Source: Mobula hypostoma (taxonomy: Eukaryota). From it: a DNA stretch of 64,000 nucleotides. Position numbers and translations under genes: made by a program. Location: assembly GCF_963921235.1 (NCBI RefSeq), contig NC_086103.1:72788001-72852000 (forward strand), written 5' to 3'. The notes under the pieces were generated by a model. It saw nothing but the letters and a program-made list of their open reading frames with translations. It was not told the DNA's origin and searched no databases. This document shows, piece by piece, positions 1-46,446 of this stretch; within the stretch, counting starts at the first letter, position 1, and every line of letters begins with the position of its first letter.

Positions 1-642
1 GTGTTAGAGCCGGGAGGGATACAGCCGACACCCCGAGTGATGCCGGGCGCTGCTGGTTTTTGCAGATTAATGGATGTGGGGTGTGGGGGGGGGGTTGGTG
101 GTGGATTGACGGGGTGAGTGAACTTGGAGGACTGATCATTGCTGATCTGAATGGACTAAGAAACAAGACCAAAGCTCGGAATATCCCCAATCATTGCGGT
201 GAAGGTTTGGGTGCACAGTGGGTATGTGAGTAGAAAAATGAATCCCAGATCCAAAATGGCAAGAGAGGAGAATGATTTCAATACTCGAGATCACAATCGG
301 ATCTTCGTACCTTCCCTGCATGTTTCTGTATCAGTGACAGAACAGCTCTCTGAAATGTTACCGCTGGACTATCGGTTGTGTCAAAACTACAGAAATGCAA
401 TGCAATCACCACATCCTACTCAGGGTCAGCTGAGGGGTGGCTGTTTCAGGATGTGGGAAATGCCTAATAATATCCACATGCTTTTGAATACGTAGAAATT
501 TTCCGTAATATTCCTCAGATGCCGCCCGGCAGGTAAAATGGATCACATTCCCGTTGCTCGGGCAGGTTTCTAAACTGTAGGCACACCCGTCTGATCATCC
601 CATTCAGCGCCATCTGTAACTTTCTTTCCTGGATTCTTTCAG

Positions 643-990
643 GTCGAGTCGCCTTCGTCTCTGGGACAAACGTGCGAGGAGTCACGGGACAGTCGATCAC
701 ACTGCCGTGCCACTATTCTGTCGGAAAATATGTAAAAAGAGCGATGTGCTGGGGTCGGGGACAGTGCCCTTTAAGCGGCTGCGGACACGTGTTGATTGGA
801 ACAAATGGACACAGAGTAACTTCTGTAACATCCCAGAAATACAGTCTTGGTGGTAGAATTGCGGCAGGAGATGTGTCGCTCACCATAAATGATCTACAGA
901 GAGAAGATAGCGGCTGGTATTGTTGCCGTGTGCGGATGCCGGGACTGTTTAATGATCTGATAACGAATTTGAATCTCCGGGTTTTGGACG
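643..990 (+). CDS. TIM/HAVCR-family IgV domain exon, copy V1 (phase 1-1, 348 nt); its leader exon lies just upstream of the window
   Basis: Acceptor ttctttcag at 634-642 and donor GTAAGC at 991. Open frame GRVAFVSGTNVRGVTGQSITLPCHYS...MCWGRGQCPLSGC...GDVSLTI...DSGWYCCRVRMPGLFND...LRVLD. The six cysteines, CWGxGxC, YCCRV and the FG-loop xFND motif are TIM hallmarks. Bases 1-130 align to intron 1 of copy V2 from about 18351. Confidence 0.93.
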
Positions 991-18211: not shown

Positions 18212-18263
18212 ATGGCTGTTACCGGCGTTGTGGCTCATTTGACAATAATGTTTCTTCTGTTAG
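18212..18263 (+). CDS. Signal-peptide exon of TIM copy V2 (MAVTGVVAHLTIMFLLL+G)
   Basis: ATG in a good Kozak context (ggcgcgATGG), hydrophobic 17 aa, phase-1 donor G|GTACGT that joins in frame to V2. Confidence 0.88.
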
Positions 18264-18759
18264 GTACGTTACTGAACGCAGGAATTGAATTAGCTTGCTC
18301 AATCTTGTTGTTACAATTTCTTGGAATACAGTAATTGAGGTGGAGCTGGTGTGTGAGTCAGGGAGCCTAGACCCTGAGTGGTGCCGGGTCTGCCGGGTTT
18401 GAAGATTGAAGGGTGAACTGACGGGGCGAGTGAACTTGGAGAACTGACCAGTGCTGATCTGAATGGACCGTCGAACACCTGATCCTTGTGTATCCATGAT
18501 TATTGAGGTGAAAGTTAGTTTGGGAGCACAGTGGGTATGTGAGTGGGAAAATGAACGAGAGGCTGGATCTGTGATCAGAGATGTCCTTTCGATTCCCACC
18601 GGGCAGTTTGGGGATTTTCCGTAATATTCCCCCGATGCCTCGCAGCAGGTAAAATGGATCAGTTTCTCAATGCTGGGACGGGTTTTCAAACTGTGGACAC
18701 ACCCTCTTTCATCATCCCATTCAGCGCCATCTGTAACTTTCTTTCCTGCATTGTTTCAG

Positions 18760-19107
18760 GTCGAGTCGCCTTCGTCTCTGGGACAAACGTGCGAGGAGTC
18801 ACGGGACAGTCGATCACACTGCCATGCCGCTATTCTGTCGGAAAATATGTCCAAAGTGAGATGTGCTGGGGCCGGGGACAGTGTGATGTTATGAACTGTG
18901 GAGATGAACTGATCAGAACAAATGGAGACAGAGTAACTTCTGTAACATCCCAGAGATATAAACTTGGTGGTAGAATTGCGGCAGGAGATGTGTCGCTCAC
19001 TATCAATGATCTACAGAGAGAAGATAGCGGCTGGTATTGCTGCCGTGTGGAGATTCCGGGACTGTATAATGATCTGAAAACGAATTTGAATCTCCGGGTT
19101 TTGGACG
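18760..19107 (+). CDS. TIM/HAVCR-family IgV domain exon, copy V2 (phase 1-1, 348 nt)
   Basis: Acceptor ttgtttcag and donor GTAAGC at 19108. Six cysteines, MCWGRGQCDVMNC, YCCRVEIPGLYND. 98 of 116 aa are identical to V1. Confidence 0.93.
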
Positions 19108-29457: not shown

Positions 29458-29658
29458 NNNNNNNNNNNNNNNNNNNNNNNNNNNNNNNNNNNNNNNNNNN
29501 NNNNNNNNNNNNNNNNNNNNNNNNNNNNNNNNNNNNNNNNNNNNNNNNNNNNNNNNNNNNNNNNNNNNNNNNNNNNNNNNNNNNNNNNNNNNNNNNNNNN
29601 NNNNNNNNNNNNNNNNNNNNNNNNNNNNNNNNNNNNNNNNNNNNNNNNNNNNNNNNNN
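29458..29658. other. Assembly gap (about 200 N, true size unknown)
   Basis: Run of N; the left flank is a CR1 fragment. Confidence 0.99.
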
Positions 29659-32675: not shown

Positions 32676-32759
32676 GAACCAGCACAACATCTGCTTCACC
32701 CACAATTGAGTCCTTGTCTACAGACCATGGAAATGACATTGTTCCATTTACTTACCAGG
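32676..32759 (+). CDS. TIM mucin/stalk exon S1 (84 nt, phase 1-1): GTSTTSASPTIESLSTDHGNDIVPFTYQ
   Basis: Acceptor ttttcttctgttacag, donor G|GTCAGT, Ser/Thr/Pro-rich open frame that continues V in phase. Confidence 0.75.
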
Positions 32760-35424: not shown

Positions 35425-35643
35425 ACAGTGTTATCTGTAACACTGGACTGTTACTGGTTAGAACGAATGGGGACAGAGTAACATCCCAAGGCTATTATCT
35501 TGGTGGTAGAATTGGGGAAGGAGATGTATCACACACTACAAGTGATCTACAGAGAGGAGTTAGTGGCTGGTATTGCTGCCGTGTGGAGATTCTTGGACTG
35601 TTTAATGATCGGAAAATGAACTTGAATCTTCTGGTTTTGGACA
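35425..35643 (+). pseudogene. TIM IgV remnant V3: 5' third deleted, GC donor, remainder open and in frame
   Basis: RTNGDRVTSQ...LGGRIGEGDVS...SGWYCCRVEILGLFND...LVLD, donor A|GCAAG. The B-strand Cys and C-strand Trp are missing. The downstream intron is homologous to those after V1 and V2. Confidence 0.8.
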
Positions 35644-37812: not shown

Positions 37813-37871
37813 ATCTTACAACCTCTCCGTTTACATCTCCCAGAGATTCCAGTTCAACTCCACATTTACCT
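37813..37871 (+). CDS. TIM juxtamembrane stalk exon S2 (59 nt, phase 1-0): DLTTSPFTSPRDSSSTPHLP
   Basis: Acceptor cattcttacaactgtcattacag, strong donor GTGAGT, S/T/P-rich; supplies the phase 1-to-0 switch needed to reach the TM exon. Confidence 0.75.
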
Positions 37872-39100: not shown

Positions 39101-40925
39101 CCAACACTTCCAGTCAAGATGATGCCAGCAAACAGTGGCTTCTCAAGCAACATCTTGCAGGTAGCCAATCTCTTCAATTATTTAACTTGTTCTACAAAGA
39201 AGTAGAACTTTCAAAGTTCTGGCATTCCAAAGGTTATTTTATTGTCAAAGTAGACATGTACAATACAACTCTGATATTCGTCTTCTCCAGATAGCCACAA
39301 AATACAGAAAAACCATAGGTGTTGTTAAAAGAAAAGACATCAAACCCTCTCAACCCTTTGTTTCTGTCTTGATTGTTTTGGAGACTGTTAGAGCCTGTGA
39401 TGGGCTGTTTGGAGCTCGATCAGGTTATCTGGCATGTTGCAATCCTCAAATAGTACCCTGAGCACAGGTTACCTCATGCAGGAGACCAGAGAGGGGCCAT
39501 AATCAACTCCATTTTGAAGCATTGAGGGAGATTGAAGTATCATAGTGAATGTGGAGGAGGTCAGTGGTTGCTCTCCATGGAGGCCATGGATTGACAGTGG
39601 TTGGTAGCCAGCTCAGCAGCATTCGGAAGGCCTCAGATCAGCAGTGCAGTGGTCAGAAGGCCACAGGTCAGTGGCGCGGTGGTCACTCTACATGGAGGGA
39701 CTGAGTTCAAGCAGTCGCTCTCACGGTTCTGGTGGGAGGATATGCTCGAAATTCTGAGATGTATGGGATTATTAGTCAGTAATTTATTTTGCAGTCCTTC
39801 AGGTTTTTATGTTTTCTTGCTTCTTGCTAATTGGCCGGTTAGGGTTCTGGGTGGACAATGTGTTGGTTTTTGTATGAGGGAGGGGTTGGGGATTTGGTAT
39901 CTGATGTTCTTGATGTTTTTTCTGTGTTGGCGATCTCCTTTTTTGTGTGTTTGACGGGGTTAGAGGTTTGGTGCTGTTGTTGCTGTTTGTTTTTGCGGGG
40001 GAGGGGTTTGGCGGTGTGATGTTATTGTTACTGGTTTCTACATTGCATGGCTATCTGGAAAAGACCAATATCGGAGTTGTATTACATGAATACTCTGACA
40101 ATAAAATGAACCTTTGGAATGCCAGTAGTCACAGGCAGCCAACTGGAAAAGAGCCCTTTATGCCCATGCATTAGTATGCGTAATCAGTGAGTTTGCACCA
40201 GGGCTCAGTGCATGAAGGTGAGGTGAATCTGTTGAATTGAAGTGTTGAGGACTGAGCAATGGAGATACTTCATTTGTGTGTCAGGGTTTATTGTACAATC
40301 AATAATGCTGATAGCCACATGGATGGATATACCAGTATAAGATTTAACTTGGGAAATAATTCATCTTTCTCACAGTTTTTACATCCTTGGAACATTCTCC
40401 ATGATATTGACCTGCACAACTGACATTTCCCACTATTTCCTGAACATTCATCCAGCAGATCTGCTCTTCTGTAGATAATTTATGTCGGTCATCTCTAAAG
40501 TGCTTCTGATGGGTTCCATTACATTTCAGAACATATTACTGCTCCAGCTGTCTCACGTTCTCTTATTTGTCAACATTTTACAGCAGAAGTAGAAAATGAA
40601 GATCAGTTCTTCCAGCCCTACCATGGTGAACAGTTCACTATTGCCTTCTCCTAATGGCTCATTTCCATCTCTTTTTACAACCCTGTGTGACCACAGCCAA
40701 GCTGAGGAGGATCCTAGCCAGGATAAATCCATACAAAGCTGCCGGGTGCTGAGGGATTCTGTGCCCCAGCTAACAGACATCTTAATGGATATCTTTAATA
40801 TCTCTTTACAACAGTCCATGCTGTGCATGCAGACTTTAAGGAAGCCATGTCGGCATTATACAGTGCTCGCAATCCGCTCATTTTAAATTTAAAGCTGAGA
40901 AAATAGGTCTTGTTCTCTGTTTCAG

Positions 40926-41034
40926 GTTCCTGGTGAGCGTGTAAACAACCTGATTTTTCTGCTTTGCTGGACCGCTCGTGTCTCAGTTTTCGTCTCTTTT
41001 CTTTCCGTCACTGTGCTGCTTTGCAAGTGGAAAC
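40926..41034 (+). CDS. TIM transmembrane exon (109 nt, phase 0-1): VPGERVNNLIFLLCWTARVSVFVSFLSVTVLLCKWK
   Basis: Acceptor tcttgttctctgtttcag, perfect donor C|GTAAGT, 25-aa hydrophobic stretch followed by basic KWK. Confidence 0.8.
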
Positions 41035-41779: not shown

Positions 41780-43790
41780 TCAAATCTAATGTAAGCAAAA
41801 GAGCGGGCAACAAAGAAAAAAATAGTGAGAAGATAGAGGATTGGGAAGCTTTTAAAACCCTTCAGAGAGCAACTAAAAGAATCAGCAGGATGGAAAAGAT
41901 GAAATATGAAAGCAAGATGGCAAACAATATCAAAGTGGATAGTAAAAGCTTTTTCAAGTATGTTAAAAATAAAAGACAGAAGAGAGTGGATATAGGGCCG
42001 CTAGAAAATGAGGCTGGAAAAATACTAACATGGGACAAGGAGGTAGCAGATGAACTGAATGAGTGTTTTCCATCAGTCTTCACTGTGGAATACACTAGCA
42101 GTGTGCTAGGTGTTGAAGGGTGAGAGGGAAGAGAAGTGAGTGCAGTTATTATTACAAAGGAGAAGGTGGACAAAAAGCTGAAAGACTTAAGGGTACATAA
42201 GTCACCCAGACCAGATAAACTGCAACCTAGGGTTCTGAAAGAGGTAGCAGTAGAGATTGTGGAGGAAATATTGATGATCTTTCAAAAATCATTGGACTCT
42301 GGCATGGTGCCAGAGGACTGGAAAATTGCAAATGTCACACCACTCTTTAAAAAAGGAAAAAGCAGCAGAGGGGAAATCATAGACCAGTTATCCTGACCTC
42401 AGTGGTTGGGAAGATGTTGGAGTCAATTGGTAAAGATGAGGTTATAGGGTACTTGGTGACACAGGACAAGATAGGACAAAGTGAGCATGGTTTCCTTAAG
42501 GGAAAATCTTGCCTGATGGATATGTTGGAATTCTTTGAAGAGATTACTCATAGGATAGATAAAGGGGATGCAGTGGATGTTGTATATTTGGACTTTCAGA
42601 AGGCTTTTGACAAGGTGCCACACATGAGACTGCTTACCATATTAAGAAACCATGGCATTACAGGAAAGTTACTGGCAAGGTTAGAGCATTGGCTGATTGG
42701 TAGGAGGCAGTGAGTGGGAATAAAAGGATCCTTTTCTGGTTGGCTGCCAGTGGCTACTGGTTTTCTGCAGGGTTTGGTGTTGGGACTGCTTCTTTTTATG
42801 CTGCATAACGATGATTTAGATGATGGAATACATAGCTTTGTTGCCAAGTTTGCAGATGATATGAAGATTGGTGGAGGGGCAGGTAGTGTTGAGGTAGCAG
42901 GAAGGCTGTAGAAGGACTTAGACAGATTAGGAGAATGGGCAAGGAAGTGGCGAATGAAATACAATGTTGGAAAATGCATGGTCATGCACTATGTTAGAAG
43001 TAAATATGCAGACTCTTTCCTAAATGGGGAGAAAATCCCAAAATCTGAGCTGCAAAGGGACTTGGGAGTCCTTGGGCAGAATACCCTAAAGGTTAACTTG
43101 CAGGTTGAGTTGGTGGTGAGGAAGGCAAATGCAATGATAACATTTTTTTCAAGTGGTCTGGAATACAAGAGCAGGGATGTGATGCTGAGGCTTTATAAGG
43201 CACTGGAGAGGCCTCACCTTGAGTATTGTGGACAGTTTTGAGCTCCTCATCTAAGAAAATATGTGCTGGCATTGGAGAGGGTTCAGAGGAGGTTCACAAG
43301 GATGACTCAGGGAATGAAAGGATTATCATATGAGGAATGTTTGATAGCTCTGGGTCTGTACTTGCTGGAATTTAGAAGGATGAGGAGGGATCTCATTGAA
43401 ACCTTTCGAATGTTGAAAGGCCTAGACAGATTAGATGTGGAAAGGATGTTTCCAATGGCGGGGGAGTTTAGGACAAGAGGGCACAGCCTCATGATAGAGG
43501 GGCATCCATTTAAAGCAGAGATGTGGAGAAATTTCTTTAGCCAGAGGGTGGTGAATTTGTGGAATTTATTACTACAGGCAGCTTTGGAGACCAGGTCGTT
43601 GGGTGTATTTAAAACAAAGCTTGATAGGTTCTTGATTGGCCACAGCATCAAAGACTACAGGAAGAAGGGTGGGGAGTGTGGCTGAGGAAGGGAAAATAGA
43701 TCAGACATGATTGAATGGCGAAGCTGACTCGATGGACCAAATAGCCAAATTCTGCTTCCATGTCTTATGGTCTAATGGTCTTTTTTTATA
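41780..43790 (+). mobile_element. Degenerate CR1 ORF2 and 3' UTR
   Basis: [44 protein letters not shown]. Confidence 0.9.
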
Positions 43791-44113: not shown

Positions 44114-44190
44114 GCACATCCTCCATCTGTCAGAACAGGAGCAGCACCAAGCCCGTGAGAGACTCCACACCCTTGCAGCAATCACTTTGA
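44114..44190 (+). CDS. Candidate cytoplasmic exon (RTSSICQNRSSTKPVRDSTPLQQSL* if terminal; internal donor at 44155)
   Basis: Good acceptor ttctgcatttttgtgtcactcag, open in phase 1 after the TM exon, GTGAGA donor option. No homology support. Confidence 0.4.
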
Positions 44191-46446
44191 TGTCCATGGG
44201 AAGGCCTTCCCATAGTGAACCAAAGATTGACTGCATATGTTGACTGAAATACCCATCCCAAGTGAGGGTGCAGGATCCAGAGTTAGTACCAAACTTTACG
44301 GAAAAGTTATGAACTGGAAAGAAAGCCTGAAATTTTTGTGTATGGAAACAATATCTTTTCTTCTGGACTGCTGCTATGTGACAATGTCATCAAAGTAATA
44401 AATCATTACATAACTGAAAAGTTCTGATGGCTTTCATCTGATCAATACTGACTTCAACAGGCATTTACAAATGTAAACGGCGGAAATGTACAAACACCAT
44501 TAAACTACTTGTACATGGCTGATGCACTCCAACTTCACGGCATGAAAGCATTTTTTGGAACTACAAATAAAACTGACCTTTTCTGGAGAGATGGCAACAC
44601 CACAGATTACAATGACTGAGCATATTGCTCCATCTATAAATTTGCGTTGAAGGTGAATTGATAAAGCCAGGAAAGTAACTGAAAATTGCCCCTCACCAAT
44701 ATGAATTGTGATGGAAAAATAGCAGAATGTCATATCAGAACTGTTTATTGAAATTCACAATGCTTCAGCCTGGATTGCCTTTTTGAAAATGGTATTTTCT
44801 ATTTTAGTATTTTCGATAGAGTTTTTGGATTATGTGCATGTATTATTTTTGATGTACTTACTTATCAATGAATGATATATGTCTTAAAAGACTTAATGGC
44901 GTTAATGAAGGAACTGAATGATTTGAGAATCATTGGCTTAATTTGGGTTGACAAACCTCAAAACGATGTGATGATGTTGGGAGTACTGAGATAATTCATC
45001 CTGGTTAGATTCTGGAGTGGATCTTGAGATGCATCCCTTATTCTGTATTATATTTTTGTCTTCTATTTGAGTAATCATACCTGACTTGTTGAATTTGATG
45101 TGCCTTATCAGGAGGGATGAGACCACAGAAAAATATGACTCTTTGCAGGCAGAAAACCGAGGCATGACTGTGATCCTGAGGAACCGGGGAGAATTGCATT
45201 GGACGGATGTAATTGGTTATGATAGTGCTGTTGTATAATAGGACACTGACAGTAATGTAACACCTGTGTAGCGCTTGTCTTATCTTGTGTGACTGAGAAA
45301 AATCAAATTGCTTCGTACTACACCAGGTGCTAGTGGGCCATCAGAAGCTCTAGGTATGGAAAGGAGGCAGTGAATAGAAAACACACGCTTCTGGGGGTAA
45401 ATTTTATTTATAGAAAATAGCAATGTATATAAAATATTTACATGAGAAAGAACAATTCAAAATTTCAACATTGCGTTTTAGCTTCCAAATCTCAGATATC
45501 AAATGGAAACCAAATTTCTTTTTAGTAAGAATCAGTGAGATTCATTAGAATTTCCTTTGTTACTCCATTTCTCTAATTAGATCTAATGTTATTCTCTATT
45601 CAAAGGTTTACAGACTAACACTTGCCTTTTTATTTATCCCTAGTTAGTTAGGAAGCTAATTGAATTCCTATTTTCAAGTATTATGGTTAACCTCAGTTTC
45701 AGTTCAGGTCAGTATATCTACAAATTCAAATTCAACCCCAAATATATATCGATACAGCTTAACTCTTTTCACAACAAATTCTCCAACATCACAACTTTTA
45801 AACTAAGTAAATCTCATTCAGTCCCTGATCAAAGTTCTTGCAAAAATAATTAGTTCTTCCATAAAATCAAATCAGATCCTCAGAAGGAAAAATAAGCTTA
45901 TACATCCAACCATATTAAATCTTCCACATCTTGAAGCATTCATTCCCGCGCTGGTTCCTCGATCTTGGGTGGCTCGCCATCCTGTTTCTTGGCTCATTGG
46001 ATGAAATGGTGGGTCATCCACTGAAAGTCCATTCACAATACATTACACAAAAAATAACTCGACCAAGTCTCTTGGTTTGCTTGCAATGTTGAATCAGATT
46101 CGCAGGTCCGGCAAGTGAGACAGGAGTTGCACTGACTTTGAATAGGTATTTTAATCATTTATTTACAAACAGTAAAAATACGACCAAACATTCATGTTCC
46201 CCAGTCACAGACACTACAAATCTCAACAAACACATGGACATTCGACAAACATACTTAAATAAAAGTGCATGCAGAGCATATCTTCCCAATCATCATGTGC
46301 ATCCTTGCCTTAAACAGAGGAAGAAGAGAGAAAGCCTCTTCCATGGCAATTTTATATACCCAGGATATTTGAAACTGGACCACCAGGCAGTTATCCAATG
46401 GGAAAAAATGCTGCAGCTCCTAAACTAACTAATCGCAATGGAGGCA

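What the first reader, a model, noticed from the sequence alone, without database searches (positions are those of the whole stretch)
40926..41034. Arginine within the TM helix: a possible activating, adaptor-coupled TIM
The TM reads LIFLLCWTA-R-VSVFVSFLSVTVLLC. Mammalian TIM-1, TIM-3 and TIM-4 have uncharged TM helices. A TM Arg or Lys is the hallmark of activating receptors that pair with FcR-gamma, CD3-zeta or DAP12 (for example FcalphaRI, GPVI, NKp46, LILRA). All candidate tails found here are short and lack tyrosine, which is consistent with this. Together with diversified V heads, this resembles a paired-receptor system. I cannot tell whether other fish TIMs already show this residue.
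Basis: partly seen in the sequence, partly recalled or inferred. Interest (0 to 1): 0.7.

Follow-up and report, generated by a model that had tools for sequence, protein, structure and literature searches.

The report
Ray TIM receptor with membrane arginine
The stretch is the real transmembrane exon of an already annotated devil-ray TIM immune-receptor gene, and its buried arginine is kept in every shark, ray and skate copy examined, next to twin genes with the same binding head but a tyrosine tail, which points to an untested "activating partner" branch of the TIM family that mammals lack.

Summary
Window 40926-41034 (+) is a clean exon (AG|...|GTAAGT, phase 0 to 1). It is the transmembrane (TM) exon of a six-exon gene whose product equals RefSeq model P0178 (Mobula hypostoma "TIM-4-like", 242 aa). 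Arg199 lies inside a 25-residue hydrophobic span. The tail has 28 residues and no tyrosine.

The arginine is not private to this copy. It is invariant in 12 of 12 predicted R-type TIM proteins from 9 elasmobranch species: 4 sharks, 1 skate and 4 rays.

Several of these species also have a Y-type TIM with an uncharged TM and a conserved EEN[IV]Y tail. V heads cluster by species, not by TM type. In M. hypostoma the R and Y heads are 85% identical; in Heptranchias they are identical. This is the pattern of a paired-receptor family.

Adaptor coupling fits the published rule for FcR-gamma partners (a TM arginine in the N-terminal part of a type I receptor), but it is not shown. One 2014 survey found no FcR-gamma in sharks; cd247 (CD3-zeta) is expressed there.

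TIM-type proteins with a basic TM residue also occur in frogs, gar, bonefish and lungfish. I found no paper describing this.

Other notes of this scan touch the same locus. Verdict: a new variant of a known kind, of moderate interest.

The parts
18212..18263 (+). Leader exon (MAVTGVVAHLTIMFLLL + first base of a Gly codon), ends in phase 1
   Evidence: tblastn match to P0012 and P0001 N-termini. ATG and G|gtacgt donor seen. Part of the exact P0178 model.
18760..19107 (+). IgV exon V2 (TIM-type head, 6 Cys, FG loop PGLYND), phase 1-1
   Evidence: PDB phmmer gives TIM-1/TIM-4 IgV at E 8e-32 to 7e-31. Sequence and splice sites. Pfam V-set E 3.5e-18.
32676..32759 (+). Mucin/stalk exon 1 (GTSTTSASPTIESLSTDHGNDIVPFTYQ), phase 1-1
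   Evidence: tblastn to P0012 and P0015. Splice sites.
37813..37871 (+). Mucin/stalk exon 2 (DLTTSPFTSPRDSSSTPHLP), phase 1 to 0, which sets the frame of the TM exon
   Evidence: tblastn to P0015. cag|AT...CCT|gtgagt. The two mucin exons together hold 26 S/T/P in 47 residues.
40926..41034 (+). Transmembrane exon, the finding itself: VPGERVNN-LIFLLCWTA-R-VSVFVSFLSVTVLLC-KWK, phase 0 to 1; Arg199 codon CGT
   Evidence: Arg invariant in 12 of 12 elasmobranch R-type sequences. Modelled as a helix over 184-227.
44114..44191 (+). Tail exon (R)TSSICQNRSSTKPVRDSTPLQQSL plus TGA stop; no tyrosine
   Evidence: tblastn to P0001 and P0015 tails, E 1e-5 to 2e-6. Sequence and stop. Exact match to the P0178 C-terminus.

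Best explanation
The exon encodes the membrane anchor of an R-type TIM receptor. This is a type I protein with a TIM-type, probably phosphatidylserine-binding, IgV head, a short mucin stalk, a TM helix with a conserved arginine towards its outer side, and a 28-residue tail without signalling motifs. Most likely the arginine docks onto the paired aspartates of a disulfide-linked ITAM adaptor dimer of the FcR-gamma/CD3-zeta family. Ligand binding would then signal through the adaptor. A sister Y-type TIM with almost the same head signals through its own conserved EEN[IV]Y tail. Shown here: the gene structure, membrane placement of the Arg, its invariance across elasmobranchs, and the paired R/Y architecture with heads homogenised within lineages. 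Inferred: adaptor association, which adaptor it is, the activating outcome, and the ligand.
For: The gene model is complete and equals RefSeq P0178. R is invariant in 12 R-type sequences from Mobula hypostoma (2 genes), M. birostris, Hypanus, Hemitrygon, Leucoraja, Scyliorhinus canicula, S. torazame, Mustelus and Heptranchias. Around it are further invariant helix positions (L-9, V+3, F+7, T+11, WK). R-type tails are short and poorly conserved: 4-24% identity between Mobula and the skate or sharks. Y-type partners in the same lineages have no charged TM residue and an invariant EEN[IV]Y. In the V-domain tree the R and Y labels need 8 changes, no fewer than shuffled labels. The R and Y heads of S. 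canicula and of Heptranchias form starred sister pairs. Within M. hypostoma the R paralogues are 85% identical in V but 97% in the TM exon, and R versus Y is 85% in V but 25% in the TM exon. P0177, P0178 and P0185 lie on the same 189.7-Mb chromosome record. Published rule (PMC1440944): all known FcR-gamma partners carry a TM Arg in the N-terminal TM segment, whereas type I DAP12 partners carry a central Lys, and the FcR-gamma Asp is at TM position 6. The FcR-gamma TM sequence was checked against the PDB. In sharks the Arg is residue 6 of a 21-residue span. cd247 is expressed in bamboo-shark T cells (PMC11372145).
Against: All comparators are computational gene models. Akula et al. 2014 found no FcR-gamma homologue in shark data (PMC4016189); the only hint of one in this genome is an unchecked scan note. 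In rays the hydrophobic span is longer, so the Arg sits at position 10 of 25, less clearly in the N-terminal segment. An Arg 5-9 residues deep can also snorkel to the outer headgroups without any partner. The skate tail (SIYWLL) and one Hypanus isoform tail (VNYIYL) contain ITIM-like tyrosines, which is unexpected for a purely adaptor-dependent receptor.
Confidence: 0.55

Rival explanations
1. It is a non-signalling tethering or decoy TIM, in the manner ascribed to mammalian TIM-4. The head binds ligand and the short tail does nothing. The conserved Arg serves another role: snorkelling to set helix depth, controlling ER exit or turnover, or lateral association with a non-ITAM partner.
For: The tail is short and motif-free. 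An Arg 5-9 residues from the outer boundary can reach the headgroups (inference). FcR-gamma was reported absent from sharks (PMC4016189). Nothing here demonstrates an adaptor.
Against: The Arg and several other TM positions are invariant across the shark-ray split, while the tail and stalk drift to 4-40% identity. This suggests a specific helix-helix contact, not mere anchoring. The R/Y pairing with homogenised heads is the pattern of activating/inhibitory receptor pairs. Neutral anchors do not need an energetically costly Arg.
Confidence: 0.25
2. It is adaptor-coupled, but through a DAP12/DAP10-type dimer and not through the FcR-gamma/zeta family.
For: In rays the Arg is at position 10 of a 25-residue span, near the centre, like the DAP12 Asp. 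Rodent DAP12 and DAP10 do accept Arg partners (Ly49, NKG2D) (PMC1440944). FcR-gamma was reported missing in sharks.
Against: The Arg-bearing DAP12/DAP10 partners cited are type II proteins. All type I partners of human DAP12 carry Lys, and K-to-R cut assembly to 15%. In sharks the Arg is at position 6 of 21, matching the FcR-gamma/zeta Asp depth. The presence of DAP12 or DAP10 in elasmobranchs was not checked.
Confidence: 0.12
3. It is a gene-model artefact or a decaying gene: the exon is open by chance or is no longer expressed, and the Arg has no function.
For: There are no transcript data. The locus is full of LINE debris, a half-V relic lies in an intron, and a TE fragment abuts the exon.
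Against: All six exons are open with consensus splice sites and compatible phases. The exon is 97% identical in a paralogue and in M. birostris. It is recognisably conserved in skate and sharks, with the Arg invariant.
Confidence: 0.04

Closest known systems
Mammalian TIM family (HAVCR1/TIM-1, HAVCR2/TIM-3, TIMD4/TIM-4)
   Same: The IgV head matches the solved TIM-1/TIM-4/TIM-3 IgV domains at E 1e-31 to 1e-22. It has six cysteines and the Asn-Asp of the FG loop. It also has a mucin stalk and type I topology. The Y-type sister genes keep an EEN[IV]Y tail motif like TIM-1/TIM-3 (the mammalian motif is recalled, not tested).
   Different: The TM helix carries an invariant Arg and the tail has no tyrosine. 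To my knowledge mammalian TIM-1/3/4 have uncharged TM helices (recalled). The stalk is very short (47 residues).
FcR-gamma-coupled type I receptors (FcalphaRI, GPVI, NKp46, LILRA/PIR-A, OSCAR)
   Same: Type I Ig-superfamily receptor, a TM arginine towards the extracellular side, and a short tail without motifs. This matches the rule in PMC1440944.
   Different: The ectodomain is a TIM IgV, not C2-type LRC or FcR domains. The Arg is deeper (position 6 in sharks, about 10 in rays) than position 3 in FcalphaRI. There is no NxxR-type motif in elasmobranchs. Association with any adaptor is untested.
CD300 and TREM paired receptors (single IgV, lipid-binding, activating members with a charged TM)
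   Same: A single V-type head, a lipid or phosphatidylserine-type ligand class expected for the head, and clustered genes with activating-type (charged TM, short tail) and Tyr-tail members that have similar heads (PMC12447643 for CD300A/C, listed).
   Different: The V family is different: CD300 (CMRF35-like) scores only E 6e-4 against this head, versus 1e-31 for TIM. The charged residue is Arg, not Lys or Glu. The Tyr-tail partner lacks a canonical ITIM.

Membership tests
TIM / HAVCR family | IgV domain with sequence homology to TIM-1/3/4 IgV | tested here: met
   phmmer against the PDB: mouse TIM-1 E 7.9e-32, TIM-4 1.3e-31, TIM-3 about 1e-23. The next family, pIgR, scores 3.6e-13.
TIM / HAVCR family | Six conserved cysteines and the Asn-Asp metal/phosphatidylserine-binding pair in the FG loop | tested here: met
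   V2 has C at all six aligned positions and ...CCRVEIPGLYNDLK..., aligned with WFND of TIM-1/TIM-4. C40, C53, C59, C64, C111 and C112 are invariant, and N121 and D122 are nearly invariant (90% or more), in 17 elasmobranch sequences. Lipid binding itself was not tested.
TIM / HAVCR family | Ser/Thr/Pro-rich mucin stalk, single TM, type I topology | tested here: met
   26 of 47 stalk residues are S/T/P. Leader helix 3-15 and a single C-terminal helix 184-227 in the model. KWKR lies on the cytoplasmic side.
TIM / HAVCR family | Cytoplasmic tyrosine motif (TIM-1/TIM-3 type) | tested here: not met
   The tail KWKRTSSICQNRSSTKPVRDSTPLQQSL has no Tyr. TIM-4 also lacks such a motif (recalled), so this does not exclude membership. 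The Y-type paralogue P0185 has EENIYQISE.
Adaptor-coupled activating immunoreceptors (FcR-gamma/zeta class) | Basic residue inside the TM helix of a type I receptor; Arg in the N-terminal segment | tested here: met
   R199 lies within the 25-residue span, and only 15 hydrophobic residues follow it. In sharks it is residue 6 of 21. The rule is from PMC1440944. In rays the position (10 of 25) is less clearly N-terminal.
Adaptor-coupled activating immunoreceptors (FcR-gamma/zeta class) | Short cytoplasmic tail without signalling motifs | tested here: met
   28 residues in Mobula and 9-13 in sharks, with no conserved Tyr. Exceptions: skate SIYWLL and Hypanus isoform X3 VNYIYL.
Adaptor-coupled activating immunoreceptors (FcR-gamma/zeta class) | Physical, Arg-dependent association with an Asp-bearing ITAM dimer; adaptor-dependent surface expression and signalling | not testable with these tools
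   This needs co-expression and co-immunoprecipitation. Background only: cd247 is expressed in shark T cells, FcR-gamma was reported absent in sharks in 2014, and an unchecked scan note mentions a gamma-family adaptor in this genome.
Paired (activating/inhibitory-type) receptor families | Members with near-identical ectodomains but alternative TM/tail modules, encoded in one cluster | tested here: met
   V identity between R and Y is 85% in M. hypostoma, against 25% in the TM exon. The R and Y V exons of Heptranchias are identical. V domains cluster by lineage, not by TM type. P0177, P0178 and P0185 are on the same chromosome record.
Paired (activating/inhibitory-type) receptor families | Inhibitory partner with a canonical ITIM | tested here: not met
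   The Y-type tail EEN[IV]Y[QNS][IV] has Asn at -2 and does not fit [SIVL]xYxx[IVL]. It resembles the TIM-1/TIM-3 tyrosine motif, whose sign of signalling depends on context.

The most novel reading that the evidence does not exclude
The TIM family was originally a paired-receptor system. An Arg-TM, adaptor-coupled phosphatidylserine receptor and a Tyr-tail receptor sharing one head already existed in the common ancestor of jawed vertebrates. The pair survives in sharks, rays, gar, basal teleosts, lungfish and frogs, and was lost on the way to amniotes or mammals. Elasmobranchs would then couple it to a zeta-like adaptor that predates FcR-gamma.
Probability: 0.25. Interest if true: 0.75.

Novelty: new variant of a known kind. 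Interest (0 to 1): 0.55.

Why it matters
In mammals, TIM receptors are studied as checkpoint and phosphatidylserine or virus-entry receptors that signal, if at all, through their own tails. A conserved Arg-TM branch with the same head would mean that, in most non-amniote vertebrates, recognition of dying cells or enveloped particles by TIM heads can be wired to ITAM activation. It would be balanced by a Tyr-tail twin, as in the CD300, TREM, SIRP and KIR systems. That gives a concrete, testable model for how paired receptors arise (heads homogenised, anchors ancient). It also offers a probe for which ITAM adaptors exist in cartilaginous fish, a point on which the literature is negative for FcR-gamma.

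Tried and rejected

2. DNA of orthologous TM exons for codon or dN/dS analysis: the look-up of encoding contigs returned no DNA for P0177 and P0043 (files too large) and had no record for P0187.

3. Homology of the elasmobranch R-TM module to the Arg-TM segments of frog, gar and teleost TIM-type proteins: an HMM of the module scored about 0 bits on all of them. Common origin versus convergence stays open.

4. The R-TM module on other ectodomains: region-restricted word searches with the Hypanus and S. canicula C-termini found only TIM-type proteins. These searches reach only close relatives.

5. A copy of the TM exon, or a Y-type TM/tail exon, elsewhere in the window: none found.

6. A purely hydropathy-based scan did not flag the exon, because the Arg lowers the score. 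The other hydrophobic ORFs it listed have no homology support.

7. An S/T/P-rich exon scan alone was not decisive. The mucin exons were found by homology.

8. Literature: six searches for TIM members with a charged TM in fish or sharks found nothing relevant. The library does not hold most subscription journals.

9. A direct search for ray FcR-gamma or DAP12 was not done.

Full report
**What is at the coordinates**

Window 40926-41034 (+) follows a pyrimidine-rich tract ending in cag and is followed by gtaagt. In frame 1 it reads VPGERVNNLIFLLCWTARVSVFVSFLSVTVLLCKWK, plus the first base of an Arg codon. The stretch is single-copy in the window. It is not part of the LINE fragment that ends just upstream of it.

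**The gene it belongs to**

A phmmer search with the neighbouring IgV exon V2 against 1.84 billion representative proteins returned TIM-type proteins. Laying the best of them on the window with tblastn, and then inspecting the splice sites, gives six exons on the + strand:

| Exon | Coordinates | Phase |
|---|---|---|
| Leader | 18212-18263 | ends in phase 1 |
| IgV V2 | 18760-19107 | 1-1 |
| Mucin 1 | 32676-32759 | 1-1 |
| Mucin 2 | 37813-37871 | 1 to 0 |
| TM | 40926-41034 | 0 to 1 |
| Tail | 44114-44188, TGA at 44189-44191 | starts in phase 1 |

- The phases fit only in this order. A V exon cannot splice directly to the TM exon, because that frame gives an immediate stop.
[quoted passage not shown] The gene is therefore already annotated; the arginine is not.
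- The head is a true TIM IgV. It scores E 8e-32 to 7e-31 against solved TIM-1 and TIM-4 domains, has six cysteines, and keeps the Asn-Asp of the FG loop.

**Is the arginine in the membrane?**

- R199 has nine hydrophobic residues before it. Only fifteen follow before KWKR. Fifteen residues cannot span a bilayer, so the span must include the Arg.
- An AlphaFold2 model built on a 17-sequence family alignment gives one helix over residues 184-227, with block-mean pLDDT 76-84 over residues 191-220.
- In the shark orthologues the hydrophobic span is exactly 21 residues, from Pro to [QRK]WKC. The Arg is residue 6 of that span.

**Is it conserved?**

Yes. R-type sequences were found in these species:
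- Mobula hypostoma (two genes, P0178 and P0177) and M. birostris (P0179).
- Hypanus sabinus (P0015, P0001) and Hemitrygon akajei (P0175, P0176).
- Leucoraja erinacea (P0031).
- Scyliorhinus canicula (P0187), S. torazame (P0043), Mustelus asterias (P0042) and Heptranchias perlo (P0099, P0197).

- In the alignment the Arg is invariant in 12 of 12 sequences. So are a Leu nine residues before it, Val +3, Phe +7, Thr +11 and the WK at the inner boundary.
- Between Mobula and the sharks the TM exon keeps 36-50% identity. The stalk keeps 23-40% and the tail 4-16%.
- A private variant or a sequencing error is therefore excluded.

**The partner genes**

Several of these species also have a Y-type TIM:
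- P0185 (M. hypostoma) and P0180 (M. birostris).
- P0183 (Hemitrygon) and P0184 (Hypanus).
- P0186 (S. canicula) and P0155 (Heptranchias).
- P0039 (Chiloscyllium) and P0189 (Cetorhinus), two further shark species for which no R-type model was retrieved.

These have an uncharged TM helix and an invariant EEN[IV]Y near the C-terminus.

- A maximum-likelihood tree of the V domains groups sequences by lineage, not by anchor type. The R and Y labels need 8 changes, as many as shuffled labels do.
- The R and Y heads of S. canicula and of Heptranchias are well-supported sister pairs.
- In Heptranchias the V exons of the R and Y genes are identical, while the leaders differ by one residue.
- In M. hypostoma the R and Y genes are 85% identical in V and 25% in the TM exon. 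The two R paralogues are 85% identical in V but 97% in the TM exon.

Ancient, orthologous anchors combined with heads that are repeatedly homogenised or re-duplicated are the hallmark of paired receptor families. P0177, P0178 and P0185 lie on the same chromosome record. No Y-type anchor exon lies in this window.

**Mechanism**

Feng, Call and Wucherpfennig (PMC1440944) showed that receptor-adaptor assembly is focused on one basic TM residue facing an aspartate pair. They also reported:
- All known FcR-gamma partners carry an Arg in the N-terminal TM segment.
- Type I partners of human DAP12 carry a central Lys.
- The FcR-gamma aspartate is at TM position 6.

I confirmed the FcR-gamma TM sequence, and its alignment with CD3-zeta, against the PDB. 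An invariant Arg at position 6 of 21 in a type I receptor with a short, drifting tail fits the gamma/zeta class best.

This step is inference. Points against it:
- Akula et al. (PMC4016189) found no FcR-gamma in shark data in 2014.
- In rays the hydrophobic span is extended, so the Arg sits at position 10 of 25.
- The skate tail and one Hypanus isoform carry ITIM-like tyrosines.

Points in its favour:
- cd247 is an expressed T-cell marker in bamboo shark (PMC11372145).
- An unchecked note of this scan reports a gamma-family adaptor elsewhere in this genome.

**Beyond elasmobranchs**

TIM-type predicted proteins with a basic residue in the TM helix and very short tails also occur in:
- Several frogs (N[IV]IRGI and FFR[VI] types) and Xenopus laevis.
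- Spotted gar (isoform X2) and the bonefish Albula.
- A lungfish, where the residue is Lys.

An HMM of the elasmobranch module does not score on them, so common descent is not shown. The feature is thus not peculiar to this ray. I found no paper that describes it.

**Limits**

- All comparators are gene predictions.
- Other notes of this scan cover the same TIM cluster.

**Verdict**

The paired-receptor reading is well supported by comparative data. Adaptor coupling is plausible (about 0.55) but untested. This is a new variant of a known kind, of moderate interest.

Noticed in passing
window 643-990 (+): A second intact TIM-type IgV exon (V1; phase 1-1, six Cys, good splice sites), about 80% identical to V2. 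Its leader is not in the window. Homology with the region upstream of V2 places the leader about 100 nt before the window start. What V1 splices to is open. Two-V gene models exist in Hypanus (P0001) and M. birostris (P0180).
   Followed up: partly
window 35454-35642 (+): A half-V relic (3' half of a TIM V exon with a 3-codon deletion and altered residues) lying in the intron between the two mucin exons of the gene.
   Followed up: partly
window 18581-18640 and 498-530 (+): A short ORF just 5' of each V exon (MSFRFPPGSLGIFRNIPPMP) matches the odd, signal-less N-terminus of Hypanus isoform X2 (P0015). It may be an alternative first exon or an annotation artefact conserved between genera.
   Followed up: no
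P0031 (Leucoraja) and P0154 (Hypanus isoform X3) C-termini: Two R-type models have tail tyrosines that fit the loose ITIM pattern (SIYWLL, VNYIYL). No counterpart was found in the Mobula window. An Arg-TM receptor with an ITIM-like tail would be unusual.
   Followed up: partly
P0022, P0027, P0040, P0049, P0067, P0082, P0086, P0093, P0132, P0142, P0147: TIM-type predicted proteins of frogs, Xenopus, gar, bonefish and lungfish also carry Arg or Lys inside the TM helix, with very short tails. The frog motif GN[IV]IRG resembles the NxxR motif described for FcR-gamma partners in Xenopus FcR-like genes (recalled; that paper, PMC2413239, was listed but not read).
   Followed up: partly
window 40596-40886 (+), 41860-43700, and much of the rest: LINE reverse-transcriptase debris fills the introns, and one fragment ends about 40 nt before the TM exon. 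There is an N-run (assembly gap or masked stretch) at 29458-29658.
   Followed up: no
P0176 (Hemitrygon akajei) versus window 44189-44260: In Hemitrygon the stop codon of the tail exon is replaced. The model reads on into sequence homologous to the Mobula 3' UTR (RCPQEGLPIVKQRLTTYGD versus *CPWEGLPIVNQRLTAYVD), adding 25 residues.
   Followed up: no
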